Shown here in pieces: positions 8,383 to 32,700 of a stretch of DNA of 64,000 nucleotides (position 1 is its first letter; the number at the start of each line of letters is the position of its first letter). The notes below the pieces were generated by a model, which did not search any database, was not told where the DNA came from, and worked only from the letters and a program-made list of their open reading frames with translations. Origin of the DNA: Chrysemys picta bellii. Its lineage: Eukaryota. Made by a program: the position numbers and the translations under genes. The DNA is taken from contig NC_088797.1 in the NCBI RefSeq assembly GCF_011386835.1, forward strand, positions 34,410,001-34,474,000, read 5' to 3'.

Positions 8383-9780
8383 CTACGAGGGGTTCTCCAC
8401 GTCCTGTTTACAGCGCTTGGCTGCCAGGTCTTCATTGTGGGCCTTGCGGATGTGCCTGTACAGGTCCCCAGACTGGGTGTAGCTCCGCATGCAGTAGCGG
8501 CACTCATAGGGGCGCTCGCGCGTGTGCACAGTGGCATGGCGCCGCAGTGTGTAGGAGCAGGAGAAGGTCTTGCCGCACGTCTTGCAGGTGGGGACGTCCT
8601 CAGTGAAGATACCGAAGTTGGGGTGTGCCTCGTACTCTGGCAGGTACATCTGCTCATGCAGCGGTGGTGTCACCATGTTGGAGTAGCCCTGTCCACCCGG
8701 CACTGGGATCATGTGGTAGGGGAGATGCTCCTGTGGAAGGAAGCCGCCCTCTGAGGACACCTCCTCTATGCCACCAGGCTCCTCAAAGCCATCGGGGTGG
8801 CGACTGCAGCCCCCAGCTGGCCCCACCTCCACTGTGGGCCTCTGGAAGATGCTCTCCATCCTCATTTCCATGCTCCGCCTCTCCAGCTGCTCCACTGTGT
8901 CCGGCTCCTCGTCAGAGATCACAATGGCTTCCACCTTCACTTTGATGGGACCCCTGTCCAGCTCCTTGGGGTAGAAGCCATCTAAGTTGCCCACCCGTGG
9001 CTCCACGGCTAAGCTCTCAGGGATGGTTTCCAGGCCGGATGGTGCCTCTGCCACATTGCCTGGGGGAAAGTAGCTGTGGGAGATGGTTTCGGTGGAGCTG
9101 CTGGGGCTGGACAGGGAAACGTCTGCAGTGACTGGGGGGAGAGGCCTACCCAAGACAGGGCCACGGGGGGAGTCGCCCTCCATGCCTGGCTGGGTAGTAT
9201 CTGCCATGTCTGCAGTTGGTGCTGGAGGCTGCTGGGGGCCTGCTTTCTCCAAGGGGTTATTCTTCCACTCCTCCTTCTTGTTCTTTCCTGCCTCACACAG
9301 ATGCAGAGGTGGTGGCAGGACCTCAGGGCTCTGCAGCTGGCACTTGGAGGTGCTGGGCAGGAACTCAGAGCTGGCTGGGGAGTCCTCCTCCTTCTTAGTG
9401 CTGTCAGCCTCTGCCAGTGCCCGTGCCTGCAGCTTCTTCTTGCAGACCTTGACAATGTCATTCATGTGCAGGTAGCTTGCAGCAGCCAGCACATCCTCCA
9501 CTGGAGTGTCATTGAAGGCCAGCATGCCCTGGTACATGAACTCCAGCAGCAGCCCGAAGGCTGGTGCTGTGACAATCTCATTGTTGATGCAGACCAGATC
9601 CCGCTTGTCCAGCCGCTCCTTGTAGAACATGTGGAAGAAGGTGCTGCAGGAGGCCAGCACGGCCCGGTGTGCTAGGAACTGGGTGTTGCCCACCATGATG
9701 GTGCAGTCGCAGAGGAAGCCCTGGTGTCGCTGCTCTCGCAGGCTCTGCAGCAAGTGCTTACTGTGGTCAGGGAACTCCAT
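8383..9780 (-). CDS. ZBTB3: Zinc finger and BTB domain-containing protein 3, single coding exon, 465 aa
   Basis: N-terminal BTB domain [26 protein letters not shown]...[14 protein letters not shown] closely matches human ZBTB3. Two C-terminal C2H2 fingers ([21 protein letters not shown]; [22 protein letters not shown]). A splice acceptor (cttcag|cATG) lies immediately upstream. Confidence 0.96.
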
Positions 9781-10799: not shown

Positions 10800-12400
10800 G
10801 GGTTCTTTGCCCCCTAGTCCCCACATCCCCACTCACCACAAAGCCGCGGCCTGAAAGGATCCGCCTACTCCCGCCCCCTGCTGCCTGCCTGTGCCACTTC
10901 TCCAACCTCTGCTGCTTGATTGGCTCGGAATCACTGTCAGTCTCCGGTTTCCCCCGAAGATTGGATACCGGCCGCTGTCATTCAATCTCCATTCCTGTCG
11001 ATTAGTTTGAAGCGCCCGTCCATCAACTCGACTCATCAGTTGATTGGTTTCCCATAAAATGTCACGCTCACGCTCTGCCCGCTGACTGGCCGCAGAAAGA
11101 TATTCCTCAGCCCTTCAGCCATCTCAACAGGCACTGGTCAGACCCGGGTCCTCCTAATGATTGGTCAACGCCCTGGTGTCACTCCACCAGCCCCGTCTGG
11201 TGATTGGTGGGATAACTTAGCCCTCCATTTCGTGTGGGGGCGGGACGTCGGTCTCCATAGTAGCCGATGAGGGGTGTGCGTGAGGGAGAGGCGGGGTGAG
11301 CGCCGCGGGAGCTATACTGTGTTCTCTCGGGGTTGGGCGGCAGAGCAGAAAGTTTGTTTTCTTGTTATTTGTTCGCTGCGATCCCTCAGCCGTGTTCCCC
11401 TCCCCGCCCTGCGCTCCTCACCCTGGCGGGGCGGGGTGGGGTCTCCTCCCCCCTCGGGGTGTCCGTGAAAGTCCCCTCGGGCACCAGGCAGCGGGAGGCA
11501 GCCGATACCCGACGGAGTGTCCCGGCCCCTCCGTAGGGGTTCTTGCTCCCCTCCCCCGGGCTGCGGCAGCCGAGGGGCGCCTCCCGCTATGGCCCGGCTC
11601 GGGCTCGTGGCGCCTGTCCCCGGAGGGCAGGGAGTCGGCCGCCAGGGGGAGCCGCGCCGCGGGCACGGGCCGGCGCGTTGCCAGCTGTCATTTCAAACCA
11701 GCCCCGGGGTTTGAATGTCAACGGGCGCGGGAGCCGGGCCCGCCTCTTCCTTCCCCGCCACTCGCCCGCCCGGCATGAGGAGACGGGGGTCGCTGCGCGC
11801 GGGGACTCCCGTGAGGCGCTCCACGCGCCTGGCGCAGAGTAGCGCGGAGGAGACGGTGAGAGCAGGGGGCGCCCCCGCGGGGGGCTTCGAGGGGGCGGGG
11901 AGCCCCGCGGGTCGGGCTGGGCGGCCCCGGCTCTGAGCGCGGCCGTTGCCGCCCAGGCCCTCAGCGGCTTTTAGGGGCTGGGGGGCAGGCTCCGGCCGGC
12001 GCGGCGCCCCCCGACCCAGCCAGCACCACGGCCCCGCGGGGCGCCTCCCCAACCCGGCCGGCGCGTTCGGCTGAGAACTCTGCCCCCCGAGCAACCTGGC
12101 ACTCGGAGCTCGGCCTGCGGGGCCAGCAATGCCGGGGCTCCTCCCCCCCCAGCTGGTGCCGCTCGGTGGGTGACGCGCGCGGTCCGAGGGTTTGTCATCG
12201 CGCCAGGACCCCCGAGCGCTGGGCAAGGGCAGAACAGGAAGAGGGGCCCGGGCAAGAAAGAGGCAAGTTGTGGAAAAGCTGCGCTGCTCTAGGCTGTGCC
12301 TGCCCGACAGCACCGCGGCACCGGTGCATGCAGCTCCCCTGCTGTGAGTGACATCCCCGCTTGCTTCAGCGCTGCGTGGGGTTCCACCGAATGGCTGGGT
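10800..12400. promoter_or_regulatory. CpG island with bidirectional promoter for ZBTB3 (-) and the PLD3-like gene (+)
   Basis: Very high CpG density. ATTGG (CCAAT) at 10919, 10960, 11043, 11160 and 11203, and a GC box GGGGGCGGGAC at about 11236-11246. Outward-facing splice donors at 10836 (-), 11296 (+) and 11856 (+). Confidence 0.75.
10837..10900 (-). other. ZBTB3: Probable non-coding first exon of ZBTB3 (5' boundary approximate)
   Basis: Minus-strand donor TGTG|GTGAGT (plus-strand 'actcaccaca' at 10831-10840) at the edge of the CpG island. It pairs with the acceptor at 9783-9782. Confidence 0.55.
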
Positions 12401-15400
12401 CTGTCGCTGTAATAAATCCTCCCTTCCAGCAGCCTAGTGAGGTCTGTCCCAAGGCTTAGGTCAGCTTAACTGTCTCCTGCGTGTGACTTTTTCACAACCC
12501 GGAGGCAGGCAGCTAGATCAAGCCCCAAGTTTTAAGTGTAGACCAGGCCTTAGTCTCATGCTAGTAGGCGGTTTATTGTTTAATCCAAAAGAAAATTGAG
12601 GTGACTTGATGACAATCTGTAACTGCTGCACAGGGAGGAGAGTTCTAACGGCAGCTGTCAAAGGCAGAATGCAATCCAATGGTTGGGAGCTGAAGACTCT
12701 GACTAGAAGAAAGGCACTTTTAACAGGGGGTGTAATTAACCATTAGAACAATTTACCCAGCCTCATGGTGGATTGCTCATCATCTGCAGTCTTTACATTA
12801 TGACTGGATGATTTTTCTAGTTCTGCTTTCGCTCAACCAGACGTTATGGGGTACAGTTGAGTGGGAAGTGATTTTGAGAATTTAAGAGTAAAAACCCTCT
12901 TGCACATCAGGCCAAAGTCATGAATTAAATTTTTTTTTGCTTTATGTTAATCAAATTACTTCCTTCTGAGAATTTTGACTTTTCTTCCTCCACCTTTTTT
13001 TCAGTTTCAGAGTAGCAGCCGTGTTAGTCTGTATCCGCAAAAAGAACAGGAGTACTTGTGGCACCTTAGAGACTAACAAATTTATTAGAGCATAAGCTTT
13101 CGTGGACTACAGCCCACTTCTTTGGCGGGCTGTAGTCCACGAAAGTTTATGCTCTAATAAATTTGTTAATCTCTAAGGTGCCACAAGTACTCCTGTTCTT
13201 TTTTTCAGTGTAAATGAAGTTACTTTTCAAAACAAAAAACAGAACTTTGTTTTGAGAGTGGGATACTTCAGCAACTTCCCAATTTGTTTTTCCTGCTTGA
13301 ATTTTTTTTCCCATCAGGGCATGAAATTCATTAAACCCAAAACCTTTTCTGGAACAGTTGGAGTTCTGATATTTTTTGGCCAAAGTGTTTTGTTAATAAA
13401 TCTCCAGCCAGCACTAGTTCCGGACTTGAGGCAGGAACTGCTGTACAAGGTTCTCTGGCCTGTGCTATGCAGGAGGTCAGTTTACATGATCAGAATGGTC
13501 CCTTCTGGCTCTAACATCTGTGACACTGTATTGCCTGGACTCCAGCCAATATCAGGACTCTGCAGAGACAGGTGCTTTGTCAACACACAGCAAGAGCCAC
13601 TCCCTGCCCTGGAGAGCTCACCCTGTACTCTACTCGACAAAGGCTGGGCGGGGAAACAGAGAGATTTGCCCAAGGTCATGTTTTTGGAAGATCCAGGACT
13701 AGACCCTAATCCAGTGACCTAGCCACTAAAACACGCTGCCTCCCTATGCCTTGGAGCTCCCCTTGCCATAGTGTTGGAGTGAAAAAAATGTCAGCAATTC
13801 ACTGAAGGTTTTAAACAGCCTGAATAAAAAACCCTCTCTCTGCTCAGAGAGTCAGGTTTCACTTCCTTGTCACTTGTGGTGTCACAAACCCACCAACTCT
13901 TCTGTTGCCTGTAGAGCCACTGCAGGTGGGCGAGGACTGAAGTTTTAAGATAAAAAAAAAAAAAAAAAAAAGGCAAGGAAAAGTGACCAAAGTTCATTTT
14001 ACAAAGAAAACATCCCTCTGTGCCAAGAACAAGCTTTCAGCCCCAAGGGGCAATTTCTTACCTGGGATTTGGAGTTACCTTGGGGGAAGTCTCTCACCCA
14101 GCACCATTATGGGACTATACTGGAGAGAGGTTTGGGTACCTGGTGTCCTCTCCCTCCTGATGGTTTATTACCCTGAGGCACAGGTCTCGCTGTTCTAAAT
14201 CCAGTATTGCCAACCCCAAAACCACTAACCAATCAAGAGGCAGGCCAGGTAGCAGGGTTACACAGTCTGGCTTCAGGCCCTGCCACTGTCTCAGTTTTTC
14301 TTCCATCTCACATCAAACCACCCACCACAGCTGGTGTTTTCACAGTATTGCTCTTCTGGGGGTGGTTTAGTACTATCAAACCTCCCCCTTTCAGTTTATC
14401 TGGGCTTTCGCTTGCTTATAGCAGTTCAGCCCTCCTAATAAGCTTCTATTCCCTGCAACTTAGACTTATTCCTCAACAAATACATATGCCCTACCCAGCC
14501 ACTCTGTGGCTGCCCCTTATGTTCCCTAGCAGGCCTGGTTTCTAGTTACATGCCATTGTCAGGGTCCCCTGGTGTCATTCCCTTCACCTGGGGAAGTGGG
14601 CTAAGTTTAGCACAAGTGAGGCTGAGCCCCTCCTCCCCCTTAAAGGACCAGTTCACCTCTGACCAACCCCAAGAAATAATGAAATTTAAAAACAAGAATA
14701 AATGTATGTTCCTTTTCATTTGAGCTCTTAGGGTCATGCCCAGGACACACCTAGGGACTGTTAGGAGCATACCTGGGTCATGTTTTCAAGCTTTTCTCTG
14801 CAATCACGAGGGCTAGAAACTTATTCTTTTTTAAGGGCAAGCTGCAATTCTTACAGGAGCTGAGGCTTTAGGTAAAGTGCCAAATGTAATGAGGATTAAC
14901 AGCGCTGTAAACTACAATCCCTTGTTAATTTGTAATCTCTGATGAAATTGAGCCTGCAGATGTGGGCAGCTCCCAGCGTCAGTGTCCAGCTCCTATTCTA
15001 CCTGGGAGAGGAATATTAACCAGGGCTCCACACTCCTCTACAGGTCCTGAGCGAGGTGCCTAGTGCTGAGGGAGGGAGCTTTCCCCTCGTTCTGCAGCCC
15101 CGGGCCAGCATCAAGGCCCACAAACTGCATCTTACTCCGGCCCGGGATCCATCGCCCACTCCAGCCAGTGATCCTACCCCCGTGCCAGCCATGGAGCCCT
15201 CGGCTGGGTCAGCCCTGGAGCCCTTGCCAATATTAACCAGGGAGCCTCCACTGCCCCAGCTCAAGGATGAACCCACCAGGACTGCGATGAAGAGAGGCCT
15301 TTCCCGGAAGCCAGCAGCAAGGCTGGAGGCTTCCAGGAGCAATAGATGGGTGGCACTGGACCAAGATGCCCACTTGGTGAGTTGCTCTGTCTTGTCTGTG

Positions 15401-18400
15401 CTGGTTTGCATGTCTGGGTCTGGAGTGATCCCTTCCCCCATTCTCCCTCACCCCTAGCTGTTACTGGTGGGTTAGCTCCTCCCAGTGCTCCACAGGGATA
15501 GGACGTTTGGTGCTGTACAGACTATGCAGATGGGCCGCTGTCTCCATTAGCCCCATGTAGCGTCTCTCAGGGACTGTGCAGCCTCTGGCAGAGCTGATAT
15601 CTGGCTATTTTTGTTTCCCTTCCAGTCACCCTATGTGAGGCTGAAGAGGCTGCAGATCTCAGAGGAGGATGAAGAAAAGGAGGAGCTTTTCCCCACCCGA
15701 AGTGAGAGCTCAGGGGAGAAAGAGGTAATGTGGTCCCTCCCTTCTCTAGCCCCTATGCCTCAGCCATCCTGGATTTCCCCCTAGAGGTGAGAGGGGTGTT
15801 CTGTGTCCACAGTCCCTTCTGCTGAGGCTGCCCACAATGGGACCAGTCAGGAACAGTTGTGCTGGGGACATCTGCCTGATGGACTGGGGTCAGCAAACAG
15901 CTATCAGATTAGAATGGGTTTCAGTCACTACTGATCTGGGGCTGGATCGGAGCCAGCACCCCCTAGAGAGAAAAGGCCCCGTGTCCCATTCCCCAGCCTC
16001 CTGAGCCAACCAGTCCTCCCTGATGCTGAGGCTGGATCGGAGCTGATGCCTTCTAGCAGCAAAAGGCCCCATCTCCCACACCCGACCTGACTGAGCCAGC
16101 CAATCCCTATGCACTGGGACTGGATCAGAGCTGGGGCGCTTTATCAGTGAAAGCCCCATATCCCATTCCCTGCCCCCCCGAGCCCTGTAGCTCCATGGAC
16201 AGTCTGGCCCTCCCATGAGTAATAGGGGTCTTGGGTTGTGGCTCTTGCTGATGCTACCCAGCCCACTCTAGGTGGGGCTTGGAGCAGCCTCACTGTGGCT
16301 GGCTAGCAGACCCTCACATTAGGCACAGGTAGTGGCTGATCCCAGGTCTCAGGCTCTGCAGCCCCCTCTGCCCCAACTTGTACCCCTCTATTGCTCAGTG
16401 CTGTTTTAGGCCATTCTTATCCTTGCACCAGAGGGACAATGCTTGGGGACTGGGGGCTGCCTCTCTCTCAACCAGGCTAAGGACCACCCTTTGGCTTGGC
16501 TGTCTCCCACTGCAGAAGCTGAACCTGGACTGGCAAGAGTTCAGAGATGAGAGAGCCCAACTGCAGGTGCTGGAGACTGCACTGCTTGGCTCAGAGACAG
16601 CCACTGTCACGGAGATCATGGCCCCCAGGCTGCAGGGCAAAGCGGCCAGCAACACCCCCAGGCTGCAGGGCACAGCTGTCTGGCTGCAAGGTGGGGCAGC
16701 CAGCAGTCTCCCTAGGCTACAGGGTGGGGCCCGCAGGTTGCAGGACAGGGCGCAGATCAGCACCCCCAGGTGGCAGAGTGCAGCTCCCAGACTGCGGAGT
16801 GTGGCATCTGGGACTCCAGTTCTGACAGAGACAGATACTCCCAGGGTGCGGCACGTTGCCCATGGAACACCGAGCTTGGCGATGTGGACAGAAACTGCAG
16901 CACTCAGGTCACCAGCTCCCAGACCCAAGAACCCAGGGAAGCCGAGCAAGGTAAAGGAGAGATCCACACCTCTGCACTGGAGTGTCCAGGTAGTCTATGT
17001 GCTGAGCTCCCTGCTCCATGTCTAGTTGTAGCACCAGGCTCCCTTCCTTGCCCCTCCACACTGGGTGCCTAACATAGTCTCCCTTTAAACAGCTGACCCA
17101 TTTCCTGACAGCCATGGCAGCTCCCCTCAGAGCCATACCCTAATGCCACAGGCAGGGAAGTAAGAGCACAGAGTTGCTTTCTCACACTGGCTGGGGGGCA
17201 GTCTCGGCTTGTGGGAGGGCATCATTGGCTCAACCGCTGTGAATGGAACATTCCCTGCCATGGAGAGCACTGTGCTCAGCAACCTTTCTCTGCACTGCAG
17301 CATTGGGTTCTGAACACTACTACTTGGAAGAGAGCAGAGCTGGTCCAACCAGCCCCCGTCCTGTCCCTGGAAGGGTTGGATGGACACAGATATGGGTCCT
17401 TGTCCATGGGGCTCCTGGAGAAGTGTCCCTTTGTTATGTTGGTTCCTGCCCAGGCAGGGCTCCCCACTAAGCGCTATTCTCTCTCTTGTTAGCATTTCCT
17501 TTTCTCGTCCACCTGCTGCATCCTTCTTCCCTTCCTGCTCATCTTGGGCTTCTCTGGTTGGTTCCTGTGGGAGCACAGCAGCCCTGTCTCTGTCCTGGGG
17601 TTGATGGAGCAGTGGCAGCTGGGCTGGAGCCATGTTGCCAGCTTGTGGAGAGAGCCAGAGGAGGAGTGCAGCCCACAGTGCAGGTAAGGGATCCTGCAGG
17701 GGGCAGGCTGTTACACGGAGGTGGTGGGCAGTAGCACATAGTGACAGCACAGACTCTGCAGGCGGTAGCAGATGGCTGTGCTTGGTCTCGGACTCAGCAG
17801 ATGCTTGGAGTGGAAGGGAGCTGGATTTTGCTCTGGTCTCTGCTTGTCCTGGCAAGTACTGATGCCCTCACTACCCCTGTTGAGGTGTCCATCTCCTAAC
17901 CCTGCCCATCTCTCCTCTCTCTCTGTGGCTGCTGCAGTTTGGTGCTGGTGGAAAGCATCCCTGTGGGCCTGGATTACAAACACTTCAACTCCCGCCACCT
18001 CCCCATTTTCCAGGCCTGGATGGACCTGTTGGATGCTGCCAACCGCTCTGTGGACATCGCAGCTTTCTACTTCACTCTCCGGGACTCAGACATGCAGGAG
18101 GAAGAACCCTCATCCTGGCAGGTGGGCTCAGCACAGGTGGAGGAAGCCCTTATCAGTTCCTGTTCTGGGGTGAGAGGGAAGGAAGGGGTTGCTAAGCCAT
18201 AACACTCATGCTGCTCCCTGCAGGGCAGGCAGGTGTTGGAGAAGCTGCGGGACCTGCCTTCTCGGGGGGTGAAGCTCAACATTGCTGTGAATAGCCCCCA
18301 GAAGTCTGACCGGGACACCGAGGAGCTGGCCAGCAAAGGTAACATAGGGGTCGGGACAGCCCCCGAGCCTGGGTGGGGATAGGGGCATGAGGGGAAGTGT

Positions 18401-21400
18401 CAGCCCTAGGAAAGGGGCAGACAAGACCCCACCCAGCTGTGCTGGGATAGCCAGGCTGAGAGAAGCGGGAAAGGATGTCTCTGTGTGATAGCCACTGTTC
18501 TGCTGGTGCCCCCTGCAGGTGCAGATGTAAAGTATGTGGAGTTGGAGCGCCTGACTGGAGGAATTGTGCACACCAAGTTCTGGGTGGTGGATGGCAAGCA
18601 CGTTTACATTGGCAGCGCCAACATGGACTGGCGCTCGCTGACACAGGTACCACAGCGGGTAGAGGGCAGACAGAGGGGAGGTTACTCACAGGGACTGGCA
18701 CTCGAGAGGGTGTGGAAAGAGGGGAGGTGTGCTCACAGGGACTGGCGCTCACTGACACAGGTACTGCAGGGGGCACGCAGGGGGACTGAGTGCTCACAGG
18801 GACTGGAGCTCACTCTCCTGGGTCCCTGTGGGGCAGGGTTAGGACTGGAGCTGGGGCTCATGTTGGAGTTGGGCATTGGGCAGTGTGGCTGGCTGCCCAC
18901 TGGGGCTGCACTCACTCTCCTGGGGTTTAGAGTTCAGCCTGGGGCTCCTGTTGGAGCTGGGGCAAGGTCATGTTTGCTGCGTGGCTGTTCCCAAACACCT
19001 CTTCCTTGCAGGTAAAGGAGCTGGGTGCTGTGCTCTACAACTGCAGCTGTGTGGCTGGTGACTTGCACCGGATCTTCGCCATGTACCGTGCATTGGGAGG
19101 GCAGGGGGCCTCACTCCCGACGGTGTGGCCGGCTTATGTCTCCGCGAAGTCCAGCCTCAGCCGCCCCCTGAAGCTGCAGCTCAATGGCAGCAGTGCAGAA
19201 CTGTACCTCTCCGTAAGTGTCCAAGTAGGCTCTGTCGGGTCAGGCAGCAAATCGTGGCTGCTTCCTGGACTCTGGGGCTGGCCTGGATGGCTCTCCAGTG
19301 CATGGGGGGCAGCCACCTAGAACTCTCTGCCAGGGGCCTCTCCCTGTCTCAGGAGGCCCTGTTACTCGCTCCCCAGAGTCTGTGCTGTGGCACACACTGA
19401 CCCTGAGGGGTTCTGAGCCCCAGAAGGCCCCGTCATTCGCTCCTGGATTCTGTGCTGACACACGTCCTGCCTGTTTCTGTATCTGTGTTCGTTTGTATTG
19501 CAGAGCTCCCCTCCCGCCCTCTGCTCCACTGGCCGTACCCCAGACCTCACAGCCATTGTCAGCACCATCCAGGATGCCCAGGCCTTTGTCTACATCTCGG
19601 TGATGGACTATGTGCCCCAGTGCACCTTCTGCCAGCCTAAGAGGTGGGGGCCACAGGATGTGCAGGCTGAAAGTGGGGTACAGGCAGTCAGCTCCCCTGA
19701 CATTGTCTCTTCTAGACACAGCTGGGAGTCCTGTGCTATCCTCCCCCATGAGGCTGGCAGCAGGGACAACCTGGGCTCTGCAGACAGTGAGGATGGGGAG
19801 GAGAGATGGAGGGCCAGACACAGGCTGGCACTAGTGAATGTCAGATAAATGGCTGGGGGTGGGCAAGGTGGGGTGCTGTTATTGGGGAGCTGGGCAGATG
19901 GGGGGTGGGTGGGCTGGACCATGACCTGGGGACTGGGCTGGTTGGGGAGAGGGGAGGGAAGTTGGGTGGCTCTGACCCAGAGGGTGGGCAGTTGGGAGAC
20001 CATGGCCTGAGGGCTGGGACCCGGGGGCTGAGCAGTTGTGAGGCTGTGGCCCAAGGTCTTGGCATTTGGGGGGCTGGGGGGCTGTTGTATGTGAGGTGTC
20101 CTGTCCCCTGACCTGGTCTCCTTGGGCTGCCCTCCAGGTTCTGGCCGGTCATTGATGATGCACTGCGTGCTGCGGCCTGCAACAGGCACGTGAAGGTGAG
20201 GTTGCTCATTAGCTGCTGGCAGCACTCGGACCAGTCCATGTTCCTGTTCCTGGAGTCGCTCAGTGTCCTCAGCCGGGAGCCTCTGGGCTGCCCGATCGAA
20301 GTGGTGAGTCCTGGAGTGGTGCAGGAATAGGGACCTGAAGTGCCTGGGGCTGGGGCTGGCTGGGGGACCGTTCCACTCCATGACTCAGCCCAGGGGCCAG
20401 CTGGTAGGAAGTTCTCTCTATGTCAGTGCCTTGCATTGGCAAGGGGTCACAGATTACCTCTGTAATCTTTTTTCAACCTTTGTGTTGAAAAGTTCCCAAT
20501 TAATATTAAGTTGTTAAAGCTAAATTGCAATAAAACCATCTTAGTTTTCAGTTTTGAGCCTCTAGTCAATTACAGAAAATGTATTTAGTAGAGGACCACT
20601 AGGTGACACTTTGAATGCTACAACCAAACTTTATTAAAAAGAAAAATCCTTAGATAAGCAAACAGGCACGCCATTATCACTTACACAGTACTACAATCTT
20701 AGGCCAGGTCTACACTATAAACTTACATTGGAATAATTACATTGCTTATCCAGGGTTGTGTCCTTGCTAACGCTTATTTTCTCATAAGATGGTATCTCCA
20801 GCTTATCTCTAACTTTCTCACACTAGCAATGTCAGTTTCCCATACTCCTCTACACTTAGGTTTTGGGCCTAAGTTAGCTTAACTTTTACTTATTTCTTAA
20901 CCTAAACCATCCTTTGTAGGTTATACCAGGACATGCTAGACCTATAGGCTCAAAGGTGACTTTGTGTTTGTCTCTTTCAGAAACTCTTTGTTGTCTCCAC
21001 GTCGGTTGAGGAGAAACAGATTCCCTTCTCCCGTGTCAACCACAACAAGTACATGGTGACCGACCGCCTAGCCTACATTGGTGTGTGCCTCCCCAGCTAT
21101 GGGGTGGGGGATCAGCCCAAGGGTCTGGAATCATGGGCTAAGCAGGCCAGAGAAGCCATCACTGGGACCAGTTACAGCATTTCAAAGTCCAGTGATGGGT
21201 GGGAGTTTTGGGAGCCAAGACTCCTGGGTTCTTCCCCAGAACTGGGAGGGGAGTGCGGTTCAGTGGGTTAGAGCAGAGAAGGGGTGTTAGCCACGATTGG
21301 GCCCCTGAATGAGTCAGTGTTGATTCCCTGCAGACTTGATGTTTGCTCCTCTCTTGGCAGGCACCTCAAACTGGTCTGAGGATTACTTCACCAACACTGC

Positions 21401-21554
21401 AGGGGTGGGGCTGATCGTCAACCAGAGTGACGCTGCTCCTGGGGTTACGCAGCTCACCCTGCGGGAGCAGCTAGAAGCTGTGTTCCATCGAGACTGGAGC
21501 TCTCCCTACTCACAGCCACTCAGCCCCAAGCCCAGCTGTGCCACCAAAAACTGA
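11775..21554 (+). CDS. PLD3/PLD4-family phospholipase D / 5'-3' exonuclease-like type II membrane protein (PLD3-like), up to 13 coding exons, about 788 aa (712 aa if started at Met 15191)
   Basis: Exons 11775-11855 (tentative), 15044-15376, 15626-15724, 16516-16950, 17493-17683 (TM: [25 protein letters not shown]), 17938-18121 (LVESIP), 18224-18338, 18519-18646 (HKD1 [20 protein letters not shown]), 19012-19212, 19504-19643, 20138-20303, 20981-21080 (HKD2 HNKYMVTD) and 21361-21554 (GTSNWS). All junctions are GT-AG and phase-consistent with no internal stops. The catalytic exons are secure; the 5' exons are less so. Confidence 0.88.
12660..12850 (+). mobile_element. CR1 LINE 3' fragment in PLD3-like intron 1
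   Basis: 'gtaattaaccattagaacaatttacc...gtggattgctcatcatctgcagtctttac...ctggatgattttctag' resembles the CR1 3' end (from memory). Confidence 0.6.
13005..13203. mobile_element. Penelope-like element terminal-repeat fragment forming a 77-bp inverted repeat
   Basis: 'tttcagagtagcagccgtgttagtctgtatccgcaaaaagaacaggagtacttgtggcaccttagagact...' is the abundant turtle Penelope-like end sequence (from memory). Arms at 13039-13115 and 13127-13203 are reverse complements with 2 mismatches and an 11-nt loop. Confidence 0.75.
15938..16190. repeat. About 90-bp degenerate tandem repeat, 3 copies, intronic
   Basis: Recurring 'gg(g/a)ctggatc(g/a)gagc...aaaggcccc..t.tccca...gagcc' at about 15938, 16030 and 16118. 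Confidence 0.65.
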
Positions 21555-23378
21555 GAGCAGTTCCCCGCCCGAATGCTGGGCCAGGCCCAGGACCTCTCCT
21601 CAGCTGGATGTACATATGCAGCGTCCCTTGGAAATCCAGCGCTATGGCAGCTTGCACCAGACTGCTTCTGCTCCCCCCTGCTCCGGGAGGGATCCCACTA
21701 GCCGAAGAAGTACCAGTGCAGGCAGCAGCAATGAAACACCTGAGGGGGCCCTGGATGCCAGCATGTGACTTGTCAGCACTAGTGCCGTGGTGCTTGCCTC
21801 CTGGCTACACTCTGAAGCTGGAGGTGTGGGGCCCTGGCACGTGGACATTAGCTAAATTTCAGGCATAGGCACCAACTTGGTGGGTGCTCTCGGGCTCAAG
21901 CACCGACAGAAAAAAAAAAAAGGGGGTGCTCAGCACCCACCAGCCACAGCTATTGGCTGGGGCCCGTGGCTGGCCACCGAACAGCTCTTCGGCAACTAAC
22001 GGGAGGCACTTCGGGGAGGGTAAAGAGGACAAGCAGCAGGCAAGGGGGGGGAGGGGTGGATAGGGGGAGAAGCAAGCAGCGAGAAAAACAACTCAGTGCC
22101 TATGGTCTCAGGGTCTAAAACCCTCTCCCAGAAGGGATGGGCACCTTCACAGGGAGAGGAGCTAGCCTTAAATTTTATTTGGGAACTGAAATTCTCCAGT
22201 TTCATGACGGGTATTTTTTTTAGGTGGGTCCCACTTACAGGTGCTGGATTGGAACTTGCTTCCTGCACTCCGGGCTGGGGGAGGAAAATAGGTCTTGGGG
22301 AAGTGGCAGGAAGAATTAGGAACAAAAGTAGTTCATAGGCTGCAAGCCAGTGCAAAGTGGCACTGCCCCAGGGCTGAATGGAGGGGCTGGTTGCAGCAGT
22401 GACCCATGGCTAGATGTGGCTTGCTGTATTGCAGGGGCCTGGGCCCTTGTCCTGTGGCCCTGCCAGCTGTGATGCCATTTTAGCGGTTGAACCGATGCAG
22501 ATTTAGAGAATACAGTTTGGTGTGGGGAGAGTGATACAGCCAGCACCGAGAGCTGGGTGCTACAGCTGTGGCCATAGGGGCTAGAGGAACAAAGACCCAC
22601 AGCCACCTAAAGGCACTTAAATGCAAAATGTTTGGGTTTAATCTGTCCCTTGACCACAGGGTCTTGGTCTCAAAGTGCCAAGGGCTGTAGATCTCCAAAG
22701 GTCTCCCATCTCTTTGTGAGCTGATAGAGTCTCCTCTGGGGCAGGGTGATTATGGCTCAGAGACAGTCTCCCATGGGGTGGGGTAGGGCTCAGAAAGGGT
22801 CTCCTCCTCTTTCCAGGACTGCTGATCCATTTATTGTATTGCTTACCATAGAGGATATTGCACTAGTTTAGAGAAGTGGCTTAGGGGGCTGAGCGTGTGT
22901 GTTTAATGTGGGGCAGGGTCCATACGTGTATGTGTGGATCTGAGCACTTGGTGCTCTCAGACCAAGATGTGAGGTGTGTGCAGAGAATGGGAAGTGGTGG
23001 TGGGGTTCTGTATAGAGTGGGGTGTGCTGGGGGAGGGGTGGGCAATGGAAAGCTGTGCCATACTGTGAGGCGCAGCCCCCTGAACTCGACTCCCAGGAGC
23101 CACGATCAGGGATTTGTTGCAGGGGTATCATGGCCCCCTCGGTGGGTGAATTTCAGGGAGTTTTGAAGGGGGTGGCTCCCTGTGAGTGGGGATTCAGGTG
23201 GGTGAGGTCTTGTGGATCAATCGTGGTTGGAGATAGATTTTGGGGATGGGGAGGTCTCAGACTGGGATTTGGGGGAGGAATTACAGAGCTCCCAGGAGCT
23301 GGGGGGGCGGGGCTGTTGACTCAGGCACGTGGGAGGGGTATGTCGCTTTCCAGAGTTTATTTTTGTACCTGACTGCCC

Positions 23379-23419: not shown

Positions 23420-23721
23420 TGTGCGCCCCGCCCTTCGCGATGTCAATCACTGTTTCCCTCCTACTCTCTCTGACCGGCCAGACCCCGAGCTCCCCCTGGC
23501 GTCCTCTGGCCAGCGCGGCAGCCGCTCGCTCGGCGGCTGCCATGATATTTTAGGCGCCGCTGTGACAGCAAGGAGCGCATGCGCACAGAACCCTACAGGT
23601 TTCTTGGAGGGGCGGGGCTCCCGTGGAGCAGTGAGGGAGGAGCTCGGGGAGAGTGGCGGAAGGAGCGGGGCGGGGATTGTGGCGGGTTCCTGCCGGTCTT
23701 CGCTCCTGACCCGCTTGGAAG
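23420..23721 (+). promoter_or_regulatory. POLR2G CpG-island promoter
   Basis: CpG-rich, with GC boxes (gccccgccc about 23426; ggggcgggg about 23609) and a perfect NRF1-type palindrome GCGCATGCGC at 23575-23584. Confidence 0.7.
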
Positions 23722-27238
<3,517 letters not shown>

Positions 27239-27421
27239 AATACAAATCCATCCCTCTCGCTGCGTGTCTGGGCTCCAGTTGGGAAGCAATTGAGCTGCAT
27301 CCAGGCCAAACCTGCTCCCTGCACCTACTGCTGTATTTATAGTGTACGGATCTACTCCCCTCCACTCAGCAGCTGGGAGTTGGGGGGTGGCTGACGGACC
27401 AGAGCTTCCTCCTTCACCTCC

Positions 27422-29419: not shown

Positions 29420-29720
29420 TTAACTCGGGACGCGAAGCACTCGGAGGGAGAGAGGCTGGGGAGCGCCCACGTGGTTGGAGTTTTAAAGCCATCACTGTTC
29501 CCTCCCATTGCACAGCTCCCTCTGTACGTGACCCAGAAGCGCCTCTCCTGTTGCCTCTCTAAAGCCCCGCCCCCTTGTGACGCCATATAAAGGCGCCGGG
29601 CTATGGTATGTCGTGCTGTGACTGGGTGTGCGGCGTCTCGCTTTGCGGTTCTTTTCTCTTTGCTTTACGGTGGTCCCGCCCCGGGCTCCTCCCTTTTCTC
29701 TGCTAGCTAAGATGGCGGCG
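29420..29720 (+). promoter_or_regulatory. EEF1G promoter / 5' TOP-like start
   Basis: CpG island with E-box CACGTG (29468-29473), GC box (about 29564-29574), TATAAA (29586-29591), pyrimidine tract TTCTTTTCTCTTT (29649-29661) and YY1-type AAGATGGCGGC (29709-29719) overlapping the ATG. Confidence 0.7.
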
Positions 29721-32700
29721 GCCGGGGTGAGTGTGTCGCCTTCGCGGGTCCCCCGCTCCTCTCTGGGCAATCCGTTTCCATCCGCTCCTGGGGGGCTGGT
29801 CGGGGTCTGGGGGAATGGCAGGGCTGGGGCGGAGGTGGGCTGGTCTGCCTGACGGTGGTATTGTGGGGGGCCTGGCCGGGGAGGGGGGTCCCTGCGGGGG
29901 CTGACCCGGGACAGGCCCCAAGGAGGGGGTAGGGGGCTTACCTGGTGCAGGAGAGCTGGGGCTGGCACTAGGGGGCTAGGGTGGGGGAATGGGGAGTGTG
30001 CGGTTAGGGGAGACGGCAGCGGCGGGGTTGTATTTGGAGGCTCCTGCAGGTGGGGGGCAATTTGGAGGGGGTGTTGACTTCGTGTCTGCCTTTGGTGGGA
30101 GGTACTGGAGGGAGGGGTCTCTGCCTTAGAAGCCCCTATCTCTTGAGGAGGAGGTGGCTGCCGTAGGATTAAGGTATTGGTGGAGAGGGGGAGTGTGGTA
30201 CTGATGGGGGGGGGGGGTAGGGGAGAGGAGTCTTTCTGGGTGTACAGCGGTACCTGGAGGAGACTTCTGCACTGGATTCTACTGTCCTTGTATGTCCCTT
30301 TGATGGAGAGGTGCAATGACCAAGAGGAGGGGTGTTGGCTTAGGTGTCTAGTCAGTGGGGTGGAGGCAATAGATGGGGGTTGTCCCAGGGTGATGAGTTT
30401 GTATAGAGAGACAGGGCTTTCTGGTGCATGGCAAAGCTGGCAGTGAAGATGAGTGGATGGGGGTGTGGCCCAGAGTGCTTGGGTTTCTGTTGGGGTAGTG
30501 GTCTTTGTGCATGTATGGGGGACCCTGAAGCAAAGGGGGCATTTGATCTGGGGTGCTGAGGATTTCTGTGGGTGAGGGGAAGTCTGGGAGGCGGAAGGAG
30601 GCGAGTACCTGTGTGAGAAGGTGATGTCTCTGAACTGGTGACAGGGCCTTGGGTGGATGAAGGGAACCACTGTCTGGTGAATGGGGGAAGGGGGTACCCG
30701 GGGTGACCATGGGAGATGAAGGGGCAAAGGGGGGGGGCTTTCTGGGTGAATTATAGGGTTGCTAAAATCAGCGTGGTGGGGGTTTGGTTTAAGGAGGAGG
30801 ATCTTCCTGGGGGACAGAGGAGACTGAGGAGGGTGGACCAGAAGACAGATCTTGGTGATGTGCTCCTGCATTTTTTGGTACTTTGTTCATTTTCTGTGTT
30901 CTTCAGACTCTCTACACCTACCCTGAGAACTGGCGGGCATTTAAAGCCCTCATTGCTGCCCAGTACAGTGGGGCTAAGATCAAGGTCCTCTCCACCCCAC
31001 CCCAGTTCCACTTTGGGCAAACCAACAAGACACCTGAGTTCCTGAAGAAATTCCCCGTTGGGAAGGTAACAGTGCTGCATGTGCCTCCTTATACTGAGCG
31101 AGGAGCATTGCTAGGGGTAGTGCCAGGTTTCCAGTAATGAGTCATTCAGATTAGAGAAACAGGTGTCCTCTGGGGTCACTCTGTCCCTCCCTCTAGTCTC
31201 CATGTGCTGGGTATATGATGGTTGGGGAGGCCTGGTCTGGCAGAGGGCAGACCAGCTGCAAACAGTGCTGCATTGCATCTCCTGGTAGAGAAGGAAATGT
31301 TGGTAGCTAGAGTGTGGTGGAGCTGCTTATGTCACTTTACCCCTTGGGCGTCCCACAGGTGACAGCTGTGCACTGACTGCTCATGGTACTTGGGAAATGA
31401 GCTGTGGAGGGACAAGCCCTGAGTAGCCCTCTTCTCCACTTTCTTTCCCCCCCCCCCCCCACATGCTTTCCCTGCTGCAAGCCACTCCATCCCCCAGGGA
31501 TGGGTGTCTAATGGGGAAGGAAACAGCAGAGGGGCTTCCTTGGTGCCTGCTGGAGGGCATGAATGCCTCCCTCCTTGCCACCCTGTGTGGGGTGCTGGGT
31601 GTCAGCAGGGCCGAGATGCCCTTGAGATGACTAGTATGTCGGCCCTTGGGGGAGGGGGAACTGGCTGTGCTCTGAGGGCTGGTGGAGTTAGCTAGTGTAG
31701 CTGAGGGGGCGGGGTGCTGCACAGGCAGGTAAAAGCCTTGGTTGCTCACTAAGGGGTGCAATGGTGCTTGCTTTCTAGGTTCCTGCGTTTGAAGGGGCTG
31801 ATGGATTCTGCGTGTTTGAGAGTAACGCCATCTCACACTACGGTAATAGCCAGGGGGCTGCCCCCAGCACCTGGGGGGAAACTTCATGGAAAGGGCATAC
31901 CCTGTGCAGCTTGTACCAGGCAGTAAAGTTAGGGTGTCCTTGACGCCATCCAGCTGCTCCTGCCTCTGCTGCTGTCCGTGCTGGGCTCAGTGGAGTAAGC
32001 AGTGTGTTGGCCAACTCCTTACAGAGTCCAGCGCACCCACGGTTGGGTCAGTGCCTGTGGACTTGCTAGACCTGTGGTGCCTGAGGCTGGCTGGGCTTGG
32101 CTCTTCCCACAGCTGGCTCTGCCAGGGCAGTTCTGCTTCCCTTCCCCTAATGATAGCCCCACTCCCGGGGCAGGTAGTTCTGCTGCTGGGGGGGGGGGGG
32201 AGGTGGAAAAGATGGGATGTGTGTGTTGATTTGGGGGGTGTATGTCTTGGGTGGACATGGCTGGGTGGGGTTGGTGTCTCTCTCCATCCCAGTGACCAGC
32301 TGGCTCTGGTTCCAGTCAGTAATGACGAGCTGCGGGGATCCACCAAGGAGATAGCTGCCCAGATCATCCAGTGGGTGAGCTTTGCTGACAGTGACATCGT
32401 CCCTCCCGCCAGCACCTGGGTCTTCCCTACGCTGGGCATCATGCACTACAACAAGCAGGTCAGTGGGGGGTGGGGCAGGTAGCTCCTGCTCTCCTCCAGT
32501 ATTCACAGTCCCAGGACCTGGCCAACTCCTTGCTGCCCCTGTGTACATGTAGGAGAACTGGGAGTCCTGGAAGTTTCCACTCCTGATACTGCTGTTCACT
32601 AACATCCCCTCCTGGAGTGTCAACAGCTTAGATCTTGGCTGTGAGGCAGGGTCAGGATTTTAGGGGTGCGCACCACTGGCTGCATTACGGTAGCACTCAG

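What the first reader, a model, noticed from the sequence alone, without database searches (positions are those of the whole stretch)
17938..21554. PLD3-like enzyme with two fully canonical HxKxxxxD motifs: candidate active fourth family member
HKD1 is HTKFWVVD (from 18569) and HKD2 is HNKYMVTD (21041-21064). Human PLD3 and PLD4 have Glu at the last position of the second motif (HNKYMVTE, HSKFMVTE), and PLD5 is catalytically degenerate (established). The flanking [13 protein letters not shown] and GTSNWS motifs and several N-glycosylation sequons are intact. Inference: an active single-stranded nucleic-acid exonuclease, possibly also a BMP synthase, that could tune TLR7/9-type sensing in reptiles independently of PLD3/PLD4.
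Basis: partly seen in the sequence, partly recalled or inferred. Interest (0 to 1): 0.75.

Follow-up and report, generated by a model that had tools for sequence, protein, structure and literature searches.

The report
Turtle PLD7, fourth PLD3-type nuclease paralogue
This is the painted turtle's copy of PLD7, an old, expressed and catalytically intact sister gene of the lysosomal nucleases PLD3 and PLD4 that placental mammals lack; databases already list it as "PLD3-like" or "pld7", but nobody has studied what it does.

Summary
HTKFWVVD lies at 18569-18592 and HNKYMVTD at 21041-21064, with the flanking motifs intact. The stretch 17938-21554 covers only exons 6-13 of a 13-exon gene (11715-21554, + strand, 808 aa). 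The gene also encodes a ~340-aa cytosolic tail and one membrane helix.

Asp at the end of the second HKD motif does not set this gene apart. True PLD3 of turtles, squamates, amphibians, fishes and platypus also has Asp there, and the D/E residue is structural, not catalytic.

The gene is still a separate family member:
- In a careful tree it sits in a clade running from sharks to marsupials, sister to inactive PLD5 and apart from PLD3 and PLD4.
- It lies between a ZBTB3-like gene and POLR2G in turtle and marsupial.
- PLD3 (next to a HIPK4-like kinase) and PLD4 (next to CEP170B) sit at other loci.

The window's protein is 100% identical to RefSeq "5'-3' exonuclease PLD3-like" of Chrysemys picta bellii. 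Fish orthologues are named pld7.

Spliced transcripts occur in four studies. dN/dS is 0.13 in the membrane-plus-luminal part. The catalytic His, Lys and Asn are invariant in 146 of 148 orthologues. The predicted fold matches PLD3 and PLD4 (TM 0.91-0.95). Enzyme activity, location in the cell and any role in immunity are untested.

The parts
11715..11855 (+). Exon 1 with the start codon (ATG 11715; a second in-frame ATG at 11775). It carries the RRSTRL motif at 11814-11831.
   Evidence: tblastn of Gopherus P0164/P0165. The product is 100% identical to Chrysemys picta RefSeq isoforms. GT donor. Not covered by the reads laid.
15044..15376 (+). Exon 2 (cytosolic tail, [10 protein letters not shown] motif)
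   Evidence: The loose ends before 15625 in X3, X9 and X11 are the last bases of this exon joined to exon 3.
15626..15724 (+). Exon 3 (cytosolic tail)
   Evidence: GT..AG joint 15724|16516 in contigs of 4 runs.
16516..16950 (+). Exon 4, 435 nt. It is alternative: absent from the 663-aa RefSeq isoform and present in the 808-aa form.
   Evidence: Present in the spliced contigs of all four runs laid.
17493..17683 (+). Exon 5: single membrane helix (aa 344-362, 17514-17570) and juxtamembrane stalk
   Evidence: Highest Kyte-Doolittle window. Joints 16950|17493 and 17683|17938.
17938..18121 (+). Exon 6, start of the luminal domain (LVLVESIP; Tyr444 = hPLD3 Tyr126)
18224..18338 (+). Exon 7
18519..18646 (+). 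Exon 8 with HKD1 (HTKFWVVD 18569-18592) and GSANMDWRS
   Evidence: One minor X1 contig skips this exon (joint 18336 to 19010).
19012..19212 (+). Exon 9 (KELG; start of the PLDc_3 region)
19504..19643 (+). Exon 10 (Asp644 = hPLD3 Asn328; Phe651 = Phe335)
20138..20303 (+). Exon 11 (Trp683 and His685 = hPLD3 Trp367 and His369)
20981..21080 (+). Exon 12 with HKD2 (HNKYMVTD 21041-21064)
21361..21554 (+). Exon 13 (completes GTSNWS, C-terminus, stop codon 21552-21554)

Best explanation
The stretch is the catalytic-domain half of the painted turtle's PLD7 gene. RefSeq calls this gene '5'-3' exonuclease PLD3-like' and fish databases call it pld7. It has 13 exons at 11715-21554 on the + strand. It is the fourth paralogue of the vertebrate PLD3/PLD4/PLD5 group and the sister of inactive PLD5. 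It is present from sharks to marsupials and absent from annotated placental-mammal proteomes. Shown here: the gene is intact, transcribed, correctly spliced and under purifying selection. It encodes a type II membrane glycoprotein with a long cytosolic N-terminal tail of about 340 aa without a recognisable domain, one membrane helix, and a two-lobed luminal HKD domain that folds like PLD3 and PLD4. Inferred: His517/Lys519/Asn534 and His732/Lys734/Asn748 form one active site. That site would work by the PLD-superfamily ping-pong mechanism through a phosphohistidine intermediate. Tyr444 and Phe727 would form the pocket for the 5'-OH terminal nucleotide. The enzyme would therefore most likely remove nucleotides from the 5' end of single-stranded DNA or RNA in an acidic compartment, as PLD3 and PLD4 do. 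The Asp that closes the second motif is the ancestral state of the whole group and has no special meaning.
For: Gene model: all introns are GT-AG, there are no internal stops, and the product is 808 aa. It is 100% identical to Chrysemys picta bellii isoform X3 over 712 aa and identical to X1 apart from a 13-aa alternative insert. Expression: contigs from 4 runs of 4 studies carry every junction from exon 3 to exon 13 exactly as modelled. Selection: dN/dS against Gopherus is 0.13 for the membrane-plus-luminal part and 0.32 for the tail. Phylogeny: the careful tree gives PLD3 100/99, the PLD7 clade 94/88 (tetrapod part 100/99), PLD5+PLD7 99/93, and the window inside turtle PLD7 99/99. The AU test rejects joining tetrapod PLD7 with PLD3 (p=0.0001) and joining PLD7 with PLD4 (p=0.014). 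Synteny: the order is ATG8-like, BTB/zinc-finger (-), PLD7, POLR2G, EEF1G in Gopherus, and the window is collinear with it. In Sminthopsis the order is a TPR 171-aa gene, BTB/zinc-finger (-), PLD7, POLR2G. Mole PLD4 lies between CEP170B and a giant minus-strand gene. Turtle PLD3 lies next to a 617-aa kinase. Catalytic residues: His, Lys and Asn of both motifs are present in 146 of 148 PLD7-type proteins; the other two have gaps at those columns. Tyr126, Glu229, Phe335, Trp367, His369 and Tyr437 equivalents are kept (residue roles from PMC12749308). Fold: AlphaFold pLDDT 92.7; TM 0.91-0.94 and rmsd 1.3-1.5 A to PLD3, TM 0.92/0.95 to PLD4. Sequence: E=1e-136 to human PLD3 and 9e-124 to PLD4.
Against: No activity, pH optimum, substrate or location in the cell has been measured for any PLD7; I found no functional paper. 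hPLD3 Asn328, which contacts a substrate phosphate, is Asp in 143 of 148 PLD7 proteins. It is acidic as in the less active PLD4 (Glu341) and in inactive PLD5, which may lower or change activity. The long cytosolic tail has no counterpart in PLD3 or PLD4 and could send the protein somewhere other than lysosomes. The PLD4 sample in the tree is only two eutherians. I could not fetch a turtle PLD4, and the AU groups were named after the tree was seen. The runs laid are only guessed to be RNA, although intron-less contigs argue for cDNA. Tissue of origin is unknown.
Confidence: 0.8

Rival explanations
1. It is simply the turtle's PLD3 orthologue, and the Asp/Glu difference is species variation.
For: The best solved-structure match is PLD3, at 51-52% identity. 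RefSeq names contain 'PLD3'.
Against: Turtles have a separate PLD3 in the PLD3 clade (100/99). It lies next to a HIPK4-like kinase in Emydura. In Gopherus and Malaclemys it sits on a different contig from the PLD3-like gene. AU p=0.0001 against uniting them.
Confidence: 0.01
2. It is the non-mammalian orthologue of PLD4, and mammalian PLD4 is a fast-evolving version of the same gene.
For: Some pipelines name members 'PLD4' or 'PLD4-like' (Carettochelys, gar, herring). Position 328 is acidic and position 411 is Phe, as in PLD4. I could not retrieve a reptile PLD4 to show both genes in one genome.
Against: Mole PLD4 lies between CEP170B and a giant gene, whereas turtle and marsupial PLD7 lie between a ZBTB3-like gene and POLR2G. 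The tree places PLD4 outside PLD5+PLD7 (99/93). AU p=0.014. A gene annotated PLD4 is reported as expressed in chicken B cells (10.1101/180158; orthology not checked).
Confidence: 0.04
3. It is a catalytically competent HKD enzyme, but its main job is not nuclease digestion in lysosomes. It could be a lipid transphosphatidylase such as a BMP synthase, or an enzyme held in the ER or nuclear envelope by its long cytosolic tail.
For: PLD3 and PLD4 are also reported to synthesise S,S-BMP with the same active site (PMC12055030, listed; not read here). The ~340-aa tail carries conserved RRS[TS]RL and QPRxSI[KR]AH[RK] motifs that PLD3 and PLD4 lack. Position 328 is Asp.
Against: The residues that bind the terminal nucleotide in PLD3 (Tyr126, Tyr/Phe411, Trp367, His369, Tyr437 equivalents) are conserved across the clade, which is hard to explain without a nucleotide substrate. 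No Pfam domain is found in the tail.
Confidence: 0.13
4. It is an inactive or decaying paralogue, like PLD5.
For: It is the sister group of inactive PLD5. It is absent from annotated eutherian proteomes and no bird orthologue appeared. Marsupial copies sit on a long branch (0.94).
Against: The ORF is intact, the mRNA is spliced, dN/dS is 0.13, and the catalytic residues that PLD5 has replaced are invariant here.
Confidence: 0.02

Closest known systems
PLD3 (5'-3' exonuclease PLD3; human and mouse structures 8V5T, 8Q1K, 8V05, 9VBH)
   Same: Type II membrane glycoprotein layout. Two HKD motifs each with the following Asn. PLDc_3 region. 51-52% identity across the whole luminal domain. Predicted fold TM 0.91-0.94. 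Tyr126, Glu229, Phe335, Trp367, His369, Asn432 and Tyr437 equivalents are kept.
   Different: A different clade and a different locus. The cytosolic tail is ~340 aa, against ~38 aa in human PLD3 by my own recollection of its N-terminus. Asn328 is Asp and Tyr411 is Phe.
PLD4 (5'-3' exonuclease PLD4; 8V08, 9VBJ)
   Same: Same fold (TM 0.92/0.95, 48% identity). Acidic residue at the 328 position and Phe at the base-stacking position.
   Different: The PLD4 locus is flanked by CEP170B. PLD4 sits outside the PLD5+PLD7 clade. His369 is kept here, whereas human PLD4 has Asn382.
PLD5 (inactive phospholipase D5)
   Same: Sister group in the tree (99/93). Asp at the 328 position. By my own knowledge, human PLD5 lies beside MAP1LC3C, and the turtle gene also has an LC3C-like ATG8 gene nearby.
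   Different: PLD5 has lost His201, Lys203, Asn218, His416 and Asn432 (R, S, S, R, D in 10-12 of 12 sequences). This gene keeps them all.
Teleost pld7 ('phospholipase D family, member 7') and RefSeq '5'-3' exonuclease PLD3-like' of reptiles, amphibians, sharks and marsupials
   Same: Same orthogroup by tree and, where checked, by synteny. The window's product is identical to the Chrysemys picta bellii RefSeq models.
   Different: Nothing essential. Teleost proteins have even longer tails (770-950 aa in total), and marsupial ones have a short tail without the conserved motifs.

Membership tests
PLD3/PLD4-type endolysosomal 5'-3' exonucleases | Two HxK(x)4D/E motifs in one chain, with catalytic His and Lys | tested here: met
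   HTKFWVVD at 18569-18592 and HNKYMVTD at 21041-21064. Invariant in 146 of 148 orthologues.
PLD3/PLD4-type endolysosomal 5'-3' exonucleases | Conserved Asn after each motif (hPLD3 Asn218, Asn432), which binds the scissile phosphate | tested here: met
   The Asn of GSAN and of GTSN are present. 146 of 148 in the clade. Roles from PMC12749308.
PLD3/PLD4-type endolysosomal 5'-3' exonucleases | PLDc_3 / PLDc_2 / PLDc domain set and the PLD3-like two-lobed fold | tested here: met
   Pfam hits. AlphaFold pLDDT 92.7. Foldseek TM 0.91-0.95 to PLD3 and PLD4.
PLD3/PLD4-type endolysosomal 5'-3' exonucleases | Nucleotide-pocket residues (hPLD3 Tyr126, Glu229, Asn328, Phe335, Trp367, His369, Tyr411, Tyr437) | tested here: inconclusive
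   Six of eight are identical. Tyr411 is Phe (aromatic, as in PLD4). Asn328 is Asp (acidic, as in PLD4 Glu341).
PLD3/PLD4-type endolysosomal 5'-3' exonucleases | Type II topology: cytosolic N-terminus, single membrane helix, glycosylated luminal domain | tested here: met
   One hydrophobic 19-mer at aa 344-362, and five sequons that are all C-terminal to it. Topology itself is inferred.
PLD3/PLD4-type endolysosomal 5'-3' exonucleases | Acid 5' exonuclease activity on 5'-OH ssDNA/ssRNA, and lysosomal location | not testable with these tools
   Needs recombinant protein and cell biology.
PLD7 orthogroup (pld7 / 'PLD3-like') | Falls in the shark-to-marsupial clade that is sister to PLD5 | tested here: met
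   Careful tree: clade 94/88, tetrapod part 100/99, window in turtle group 99/99.
PLD7 orthogroup (pld7 / 'PLD3-like') | Locus between a ZBTB3-like BTB/zinc-finger gene and POLR2G | tested here: met
   Gopherus. The window is collinear, with a BTB/C2H2 ORF at 8383-9780 on the minus strand. Sminthopsis.
PLD7 orthogroup (pld7 / 'PLD3-like') | Long cytosolic N-terminal extension with RRS[TS]RL and QPRxSI[KR]AH[RK] motifs | tested here: met
   Alignment of N-termini. RRSTRL lies at 11814-11831.
PLD3 orthologue | Membership of the PLD3 clade, and a locus next to a HIPK4-like kinase | tested here: not met
   A separate PLD3 exists in the same turtle genomes.
PLD4 orthologue | Locus between CEP170B and an AHNAK2-like giant gene, and grouping with PLD4 | tested here: not met
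   (mole PLD4 locus). Tree and AU p=0.014. Only two eutherian PLD4 sequences were sampled.
PLD5 (inactive) | Loss of the catalytic His, Lys and Asn | tested here: not met
   All are retained here and replaced in PLD5.

The most novel reading that the evidence does not exclude
PLD7 may not be a redundant third lysosomal exonuclease. It could be an active HKD enzyme placed elsewhere by its long, conserved cytosolic tail. The RRS[TS]RL motif in that tail resembles the nucleosome-binding core of HMGN proteins. The protein might, for example, sit at the ER or nuclear envelope or in a specialised endosome. Its loss in placental mammals (no bird orthologue appeared either) would then have removed a distinct branch of nucleic-acid or lipid handling that non-mammalian models still have.
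Probability: 0.12. Interest if true: 0.65.

Novelty: new member of a known kind. Interest (0 to 1): 0.4.

Why it matters
PLD3 and PLD4 are studied as the lysosomal 5' exonucleases that limit TLR7/TLR9 ligands, and as BMP synthases, almost only in human and mouse. The literature I searched counts the PLD family as PLD1-6 (PMC12837048, abstract).

This locus shows that most jawed-vertebrate groups sampled here, from sharks to marsupials, carry a further catalytically intact paralogue that placental mammals lack (no bird or monotreme copy appeared). Three things follow:
- Knock-out phenotypes and redundancy arguments drawn from mouse may not transfer to fish, amphibian, reptile or marsupial models.
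- PLD7 is the active sister of inactive PLD5, which gives a natural comparison for what PLD5 lost.
- The Glu of the mammalian 'HKE' motif is a derived state, not a hallmark of nuclease-type PLDs.

The gene is already catalogued, so the gain is in classification and in a testable hypothesis, not in discovery of a new kind of system.

Tried and rejected
1. I used the single representative-library search on exon 9 alone, because spliced proteins cannot be passed by reference. It gave many short fragments and only one PLD4.
2. I could not obtain a reptile or other non-mammalian PLD4. The three word-index searches went to PLD7, turtle PLD3 and marsupial PLD7. A PLD4 query would have returned only eutherians.
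3. An exact look-up of Chrysemys isoform X4 found nothing, because only the longest product of a gene is indexed. I used the Gopherus orthologue instead.
4. The paddlefish PLD5 locus was too long (110 kb) to show neighbours. The PLD5-MAP1LC3C link therefore rests on my own knowledge.
5. Pfam on the cytosolic tail gave only low-complexity noise and no HMGN match.
6. The loose contig ends at 21541 and 21574 match nothing else in the window and stay unexplained.
7. Literature searches for PLD7 and for PLD3/4/5 phylogeny found one incidental gene-list mention of pld7 in pompano and no functional or evolutionary study.
8. Rejected readings: PLD3 orthologue, reptile-specific duplicate, pseudogene.
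9. I handled no human sequence. The window has no N runs.
Full report
OBSERVATION. The window contains no N runs. GSANMDWRS lies at 18611-18637 and KELG at 19015-19026. GTSNWS is split by the last intron. Five N-x-S/T sequons are present. Pfam finds PLDc, PLDc_2 and PLDc_3 on the exon translations. Human PLD3 ends its second motif in Glu (chain 8v5t_A; PMC7857491). Fish PLD5-type proteins have replaced the catalytic residues.

GENE MODEL. The stretch 17938-21554 is only exons 6-13. tblastn with full-length relatives, followed by splice-site inspection, gives 13 exons. They are 11715-11855, 15044-15376, 15626-15724, 16516-16950 (alternative), 17493-17683, 17938-18121, 18224-18338, 18519-18646, 19012-19212, 19504-19643, 20138-20303, 20981-21080 and 21361-21554. 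All introns are GT-AG and the reading frame is open for 808 aa.

The product is 100% identical over 712 aa to '5'-3' exonuclease PLD3-like isoform X3 [Chrysemys picta bellii]'. It is identical to isoform X1 apart from a 13-aa alternative insert. The window is therefore painted-turtle DNA, and RefSeq already annotates the gene.

The protein has three parts. A tail of about 340 aa has no Pfam domain. One hydrophobic helix lies at aa 344-362. The luminal HKD domain follows.

EXPRESSION AND CONSTRAINT. Fourteen runs hold 27-40% of the sampled words of 17450-21600, which is about the exonic share. Contigs from four of these runs, from four studies and two organism labels, were laid on 15610-21600. 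They carry every junction from exon 3 to exon 13 at the predicted GT..AG sites and include the alternative exon 4. One minor contig skips exon 8. The runs are only guessed to be RNA, but intron-less contigs are what cDNA gives.

Against the Gopherus orthologue (locus L001), whose CDS I rebuilt and which translates exactly to P0165, dN/dS is 0.20 overall. It is 0.13 for the membrane-plus-luminal part and 0.32 for the tail.

WHICH FAMILY MEMBER. An exon-9 search of the representative library returned long proteins of 630-930 aa that all carry HNKYMVTD or HAKYMVTD. A word-index search with the gecko relative listed orthologues in turtles, squamates, tuatara, alligator, caecilians, salamanders, lungfish, coelacanth, sharks, rays, bichir, gar and teleosts. 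Their names vary between 'PLD3-like', 'PLD3', 'PLD4-like', 'uncharacterized protein pld7' and 'Phospholipase D family, member 7'.

A search with turtle PLD3 returned a separate set named PLD3 from many of the same species, with proteins of about 490 aa. Gopherus and Malaclemys carry PLD3 and PLD3-like on different contigs.

A careful IQ-TREE of 53 proteins gives these supports:
- PLD3: 100/99.
- Two eutherian PLD4: 100/100. They sit with hagfish sequences at weak support.
- PLD5+PLD7: 99/93.
- PLD7: 94/88. The tetrapod part is 100/99 and the amniote part 96/99.
- The window inside turtle PLD7: 99/99.

AU tests reject a clade of tetrapod PLD7 plus PLD3 (p=0.0001). They reject a clade of PLD7 plus PLD4 less strongly (p=0.014). 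The groups were defined after the tree was seen.

Four marsupial 'PLD3-like' proteins (Sminthopsis, Sarcophilus, Dromiciops, Monodelphis) fall inside amniote PLD7 on a long branch. No eutherian, monotreme or bird protein appeared in the PLD7 group among the best 120 hits of either PLD7 query. Eutherian proteins appear only as PLD3 or PLD4, at 50-52% identity.

SYNTENY. In Gopherus the order is an ATG8-family gene, a BTB/zinc-finger gene on the minus strand, PLD7, POLR2G (Rpb7 domains) and EEF1G. The window is collinear with this locus at 87-91% identity and has the BTB/C2H2 ORF at 8383-9780 on the minus strand.

In Sminthopsis the order is a 171-aa TPR gene, a BTB/zinc-finger gene on the minus strand, PLD7 and POLR2G. 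Mole PLD4 lies between CEP170B and a giant minus-strand gene. Emydura PLD3 lies next to a 617-aa kinase.

From my own knowledge, these match four human regions:
- TTC9C-ZBTB3-POLR2G at 11q12.3, with EEF1G and AHNAK nearby and no PLD gene.
- CEP170B-PLD4-AHNAK2 at 14q32.33.
- PLD3-HIPK4 at 19q13.2.
- PLD5-MAP1LC3C-CEP170 at 1q43.

Paired AHNAK/AHNAK2, CEP170/CEP170B and LC3C-like genes fit four paralogous regions from the early vertebrate genome duplications. This last step is inference. I did not inspect human DNA.

THE ASP/GLU ARGUMENT. Among 135 PLD3-type proteins, 72 have Asp and 61 have Glu at the end of the second motif. All turtle PLD3, squamates, amphibians, fishes and platypus have Asp. 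Eutherian and most bird PLD3 have Glu. In PLD7 it is Asp in 146 of 148.

Structural papers state that this Asp/Glu sits away from the catalytic centre and hydrogen-bonds main-chain amides (PMC12749308; PMC7857491). Two 'fully canonical' motifs are therefore the ancestral state. They neither single out this gene nor predict a different activity.

LIKELY MECHANISM. The luminal domain aligns end to end with human PLD3 (E=1e-136) and PLD4 (9e-124). An AlphaFold model (pLDDT 92.7) superposes on PLD3 at TM 0.91-0.94 and rmsd 1.3-1.5 A, and on PLD4 at TM 0.92/0.95.

I mapped the residues that contact ssDNA in human PLD3 (PMC12749308). The following are kept, and nearly all are invariant across the clade: His201, Lys203, Asn218, His416, Lys418, Asn432, Tyr126, Glu229, Phe335, Trp367, His369 and Tyr437. 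Tyr411 is Phe, as in PLD4. Asn328 is Asp, acidic like PLD4 Glu341.

I therefore infer a phosphohistidine ping-pong hydrolase that trims 5'-OH single-stranded nucleic acids. It has a PLD3-like pocket and one PLD4-like feature that might lower activity. Activity, pH optimum, BMP synthesis, location and any effect on TLR signalling are untested.

The long tail carries RRS[TS]RL and QPRxSI[KR]AH[RK] motifs. RRS[TS]RL is shared by salmon, salamanders, lizards and turtles. QPRxSI[KR]AH[RK] runs from bichir and coelacanth to reptiles. The tail is the main structural difference from PLD3 and PLD4 and could change sorting.

NOVELTY AND VERDICT. The gene is catalogued (RefSeq PLD3-like; pld7 in fish), so its existence is not new. 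In the paper library I found only an incidental pld7 entry in a fish gene list. I found no study of its function or evolution, and a 2025 review counts PLD1-6 (abstract).

I rate it a new member of a known kind and of moderate interest. Its diagnostic argument and its restriction to reptiles do not.

Noticed in passing
window 8383-9780 (-): Single-exon 465-aa ORF with a BTB/POZ domain and C-terminal C2H2 zinc fingers. The same gene sits upstream of PLD7 in Gopherus and Sminthopsis. It is probably the ZBTB3 orthologue.
   Followed up: partly
window about 23700-27300 and from about 29650 (+): By collinearity with Gopherus locus L001, POLR2G (Rpb7 N-terminal and S1 domains, 172 aa) and EEF1G follow PLD7. 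A Crotalus adamanteus gene model (P0199) even fuses PLD7 with the POLR2G domains.
   Followed up: partly
window 11814-11831 and exon 2 (15044-15376): The cytosolic tail carries RRSTRL and [14 protein letters not shown][TS]RL recurs in salmon, salamanders, lizards and tuatara-like forms. QPRxSI[KR]AH[RK] recurs from bichir and coelacanth to reptiles. Marsupial copies lack both. No Pfam domain matches.
   Followed up: partly
window 18336 to 19010 (joint in run X1): One low-depth contig skips exon 8 (128 nt, HKD1), which would shift the frame. It is a minor isoform or splicing noise.
   Followed up: no
window 21541 and 21574: Contigs of X1 and X3 leave the window sequence 13 nt before the stop codon and rejoin 20 nt after it. 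The loose letters occur nowhere else in the window. Unexplained; possibly graph artefacts.
   Followed up: partly
L002 (Sminthopsis), proteins P0008, P0229, P0405, P0406: Marsupials keep a syntenic PLD7 with intact HSKFWVVD and HNKFMVTD motifs. It has a short tail and a long branch (0.94 substitutions per site). No monotreme, eutherian or bird orthologue appeared in the hit lists.
   Followed up: partly
proteins P0037 (Manacus), P0057 (Coturnix): Bird 'PLD3-like' proteins with very long branches fall inside bird PLD3, not PLD7. They may be extra bird PLD3 copies or poor gene models.
   Followed up: no
window 29492-30871 (-): A 459-aa ATG ORF with no Pfam match, lying antisense in the region collinear with EEF1G. 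It is probably a chance ORF in GC-rich DNA.
   Followed up: partly
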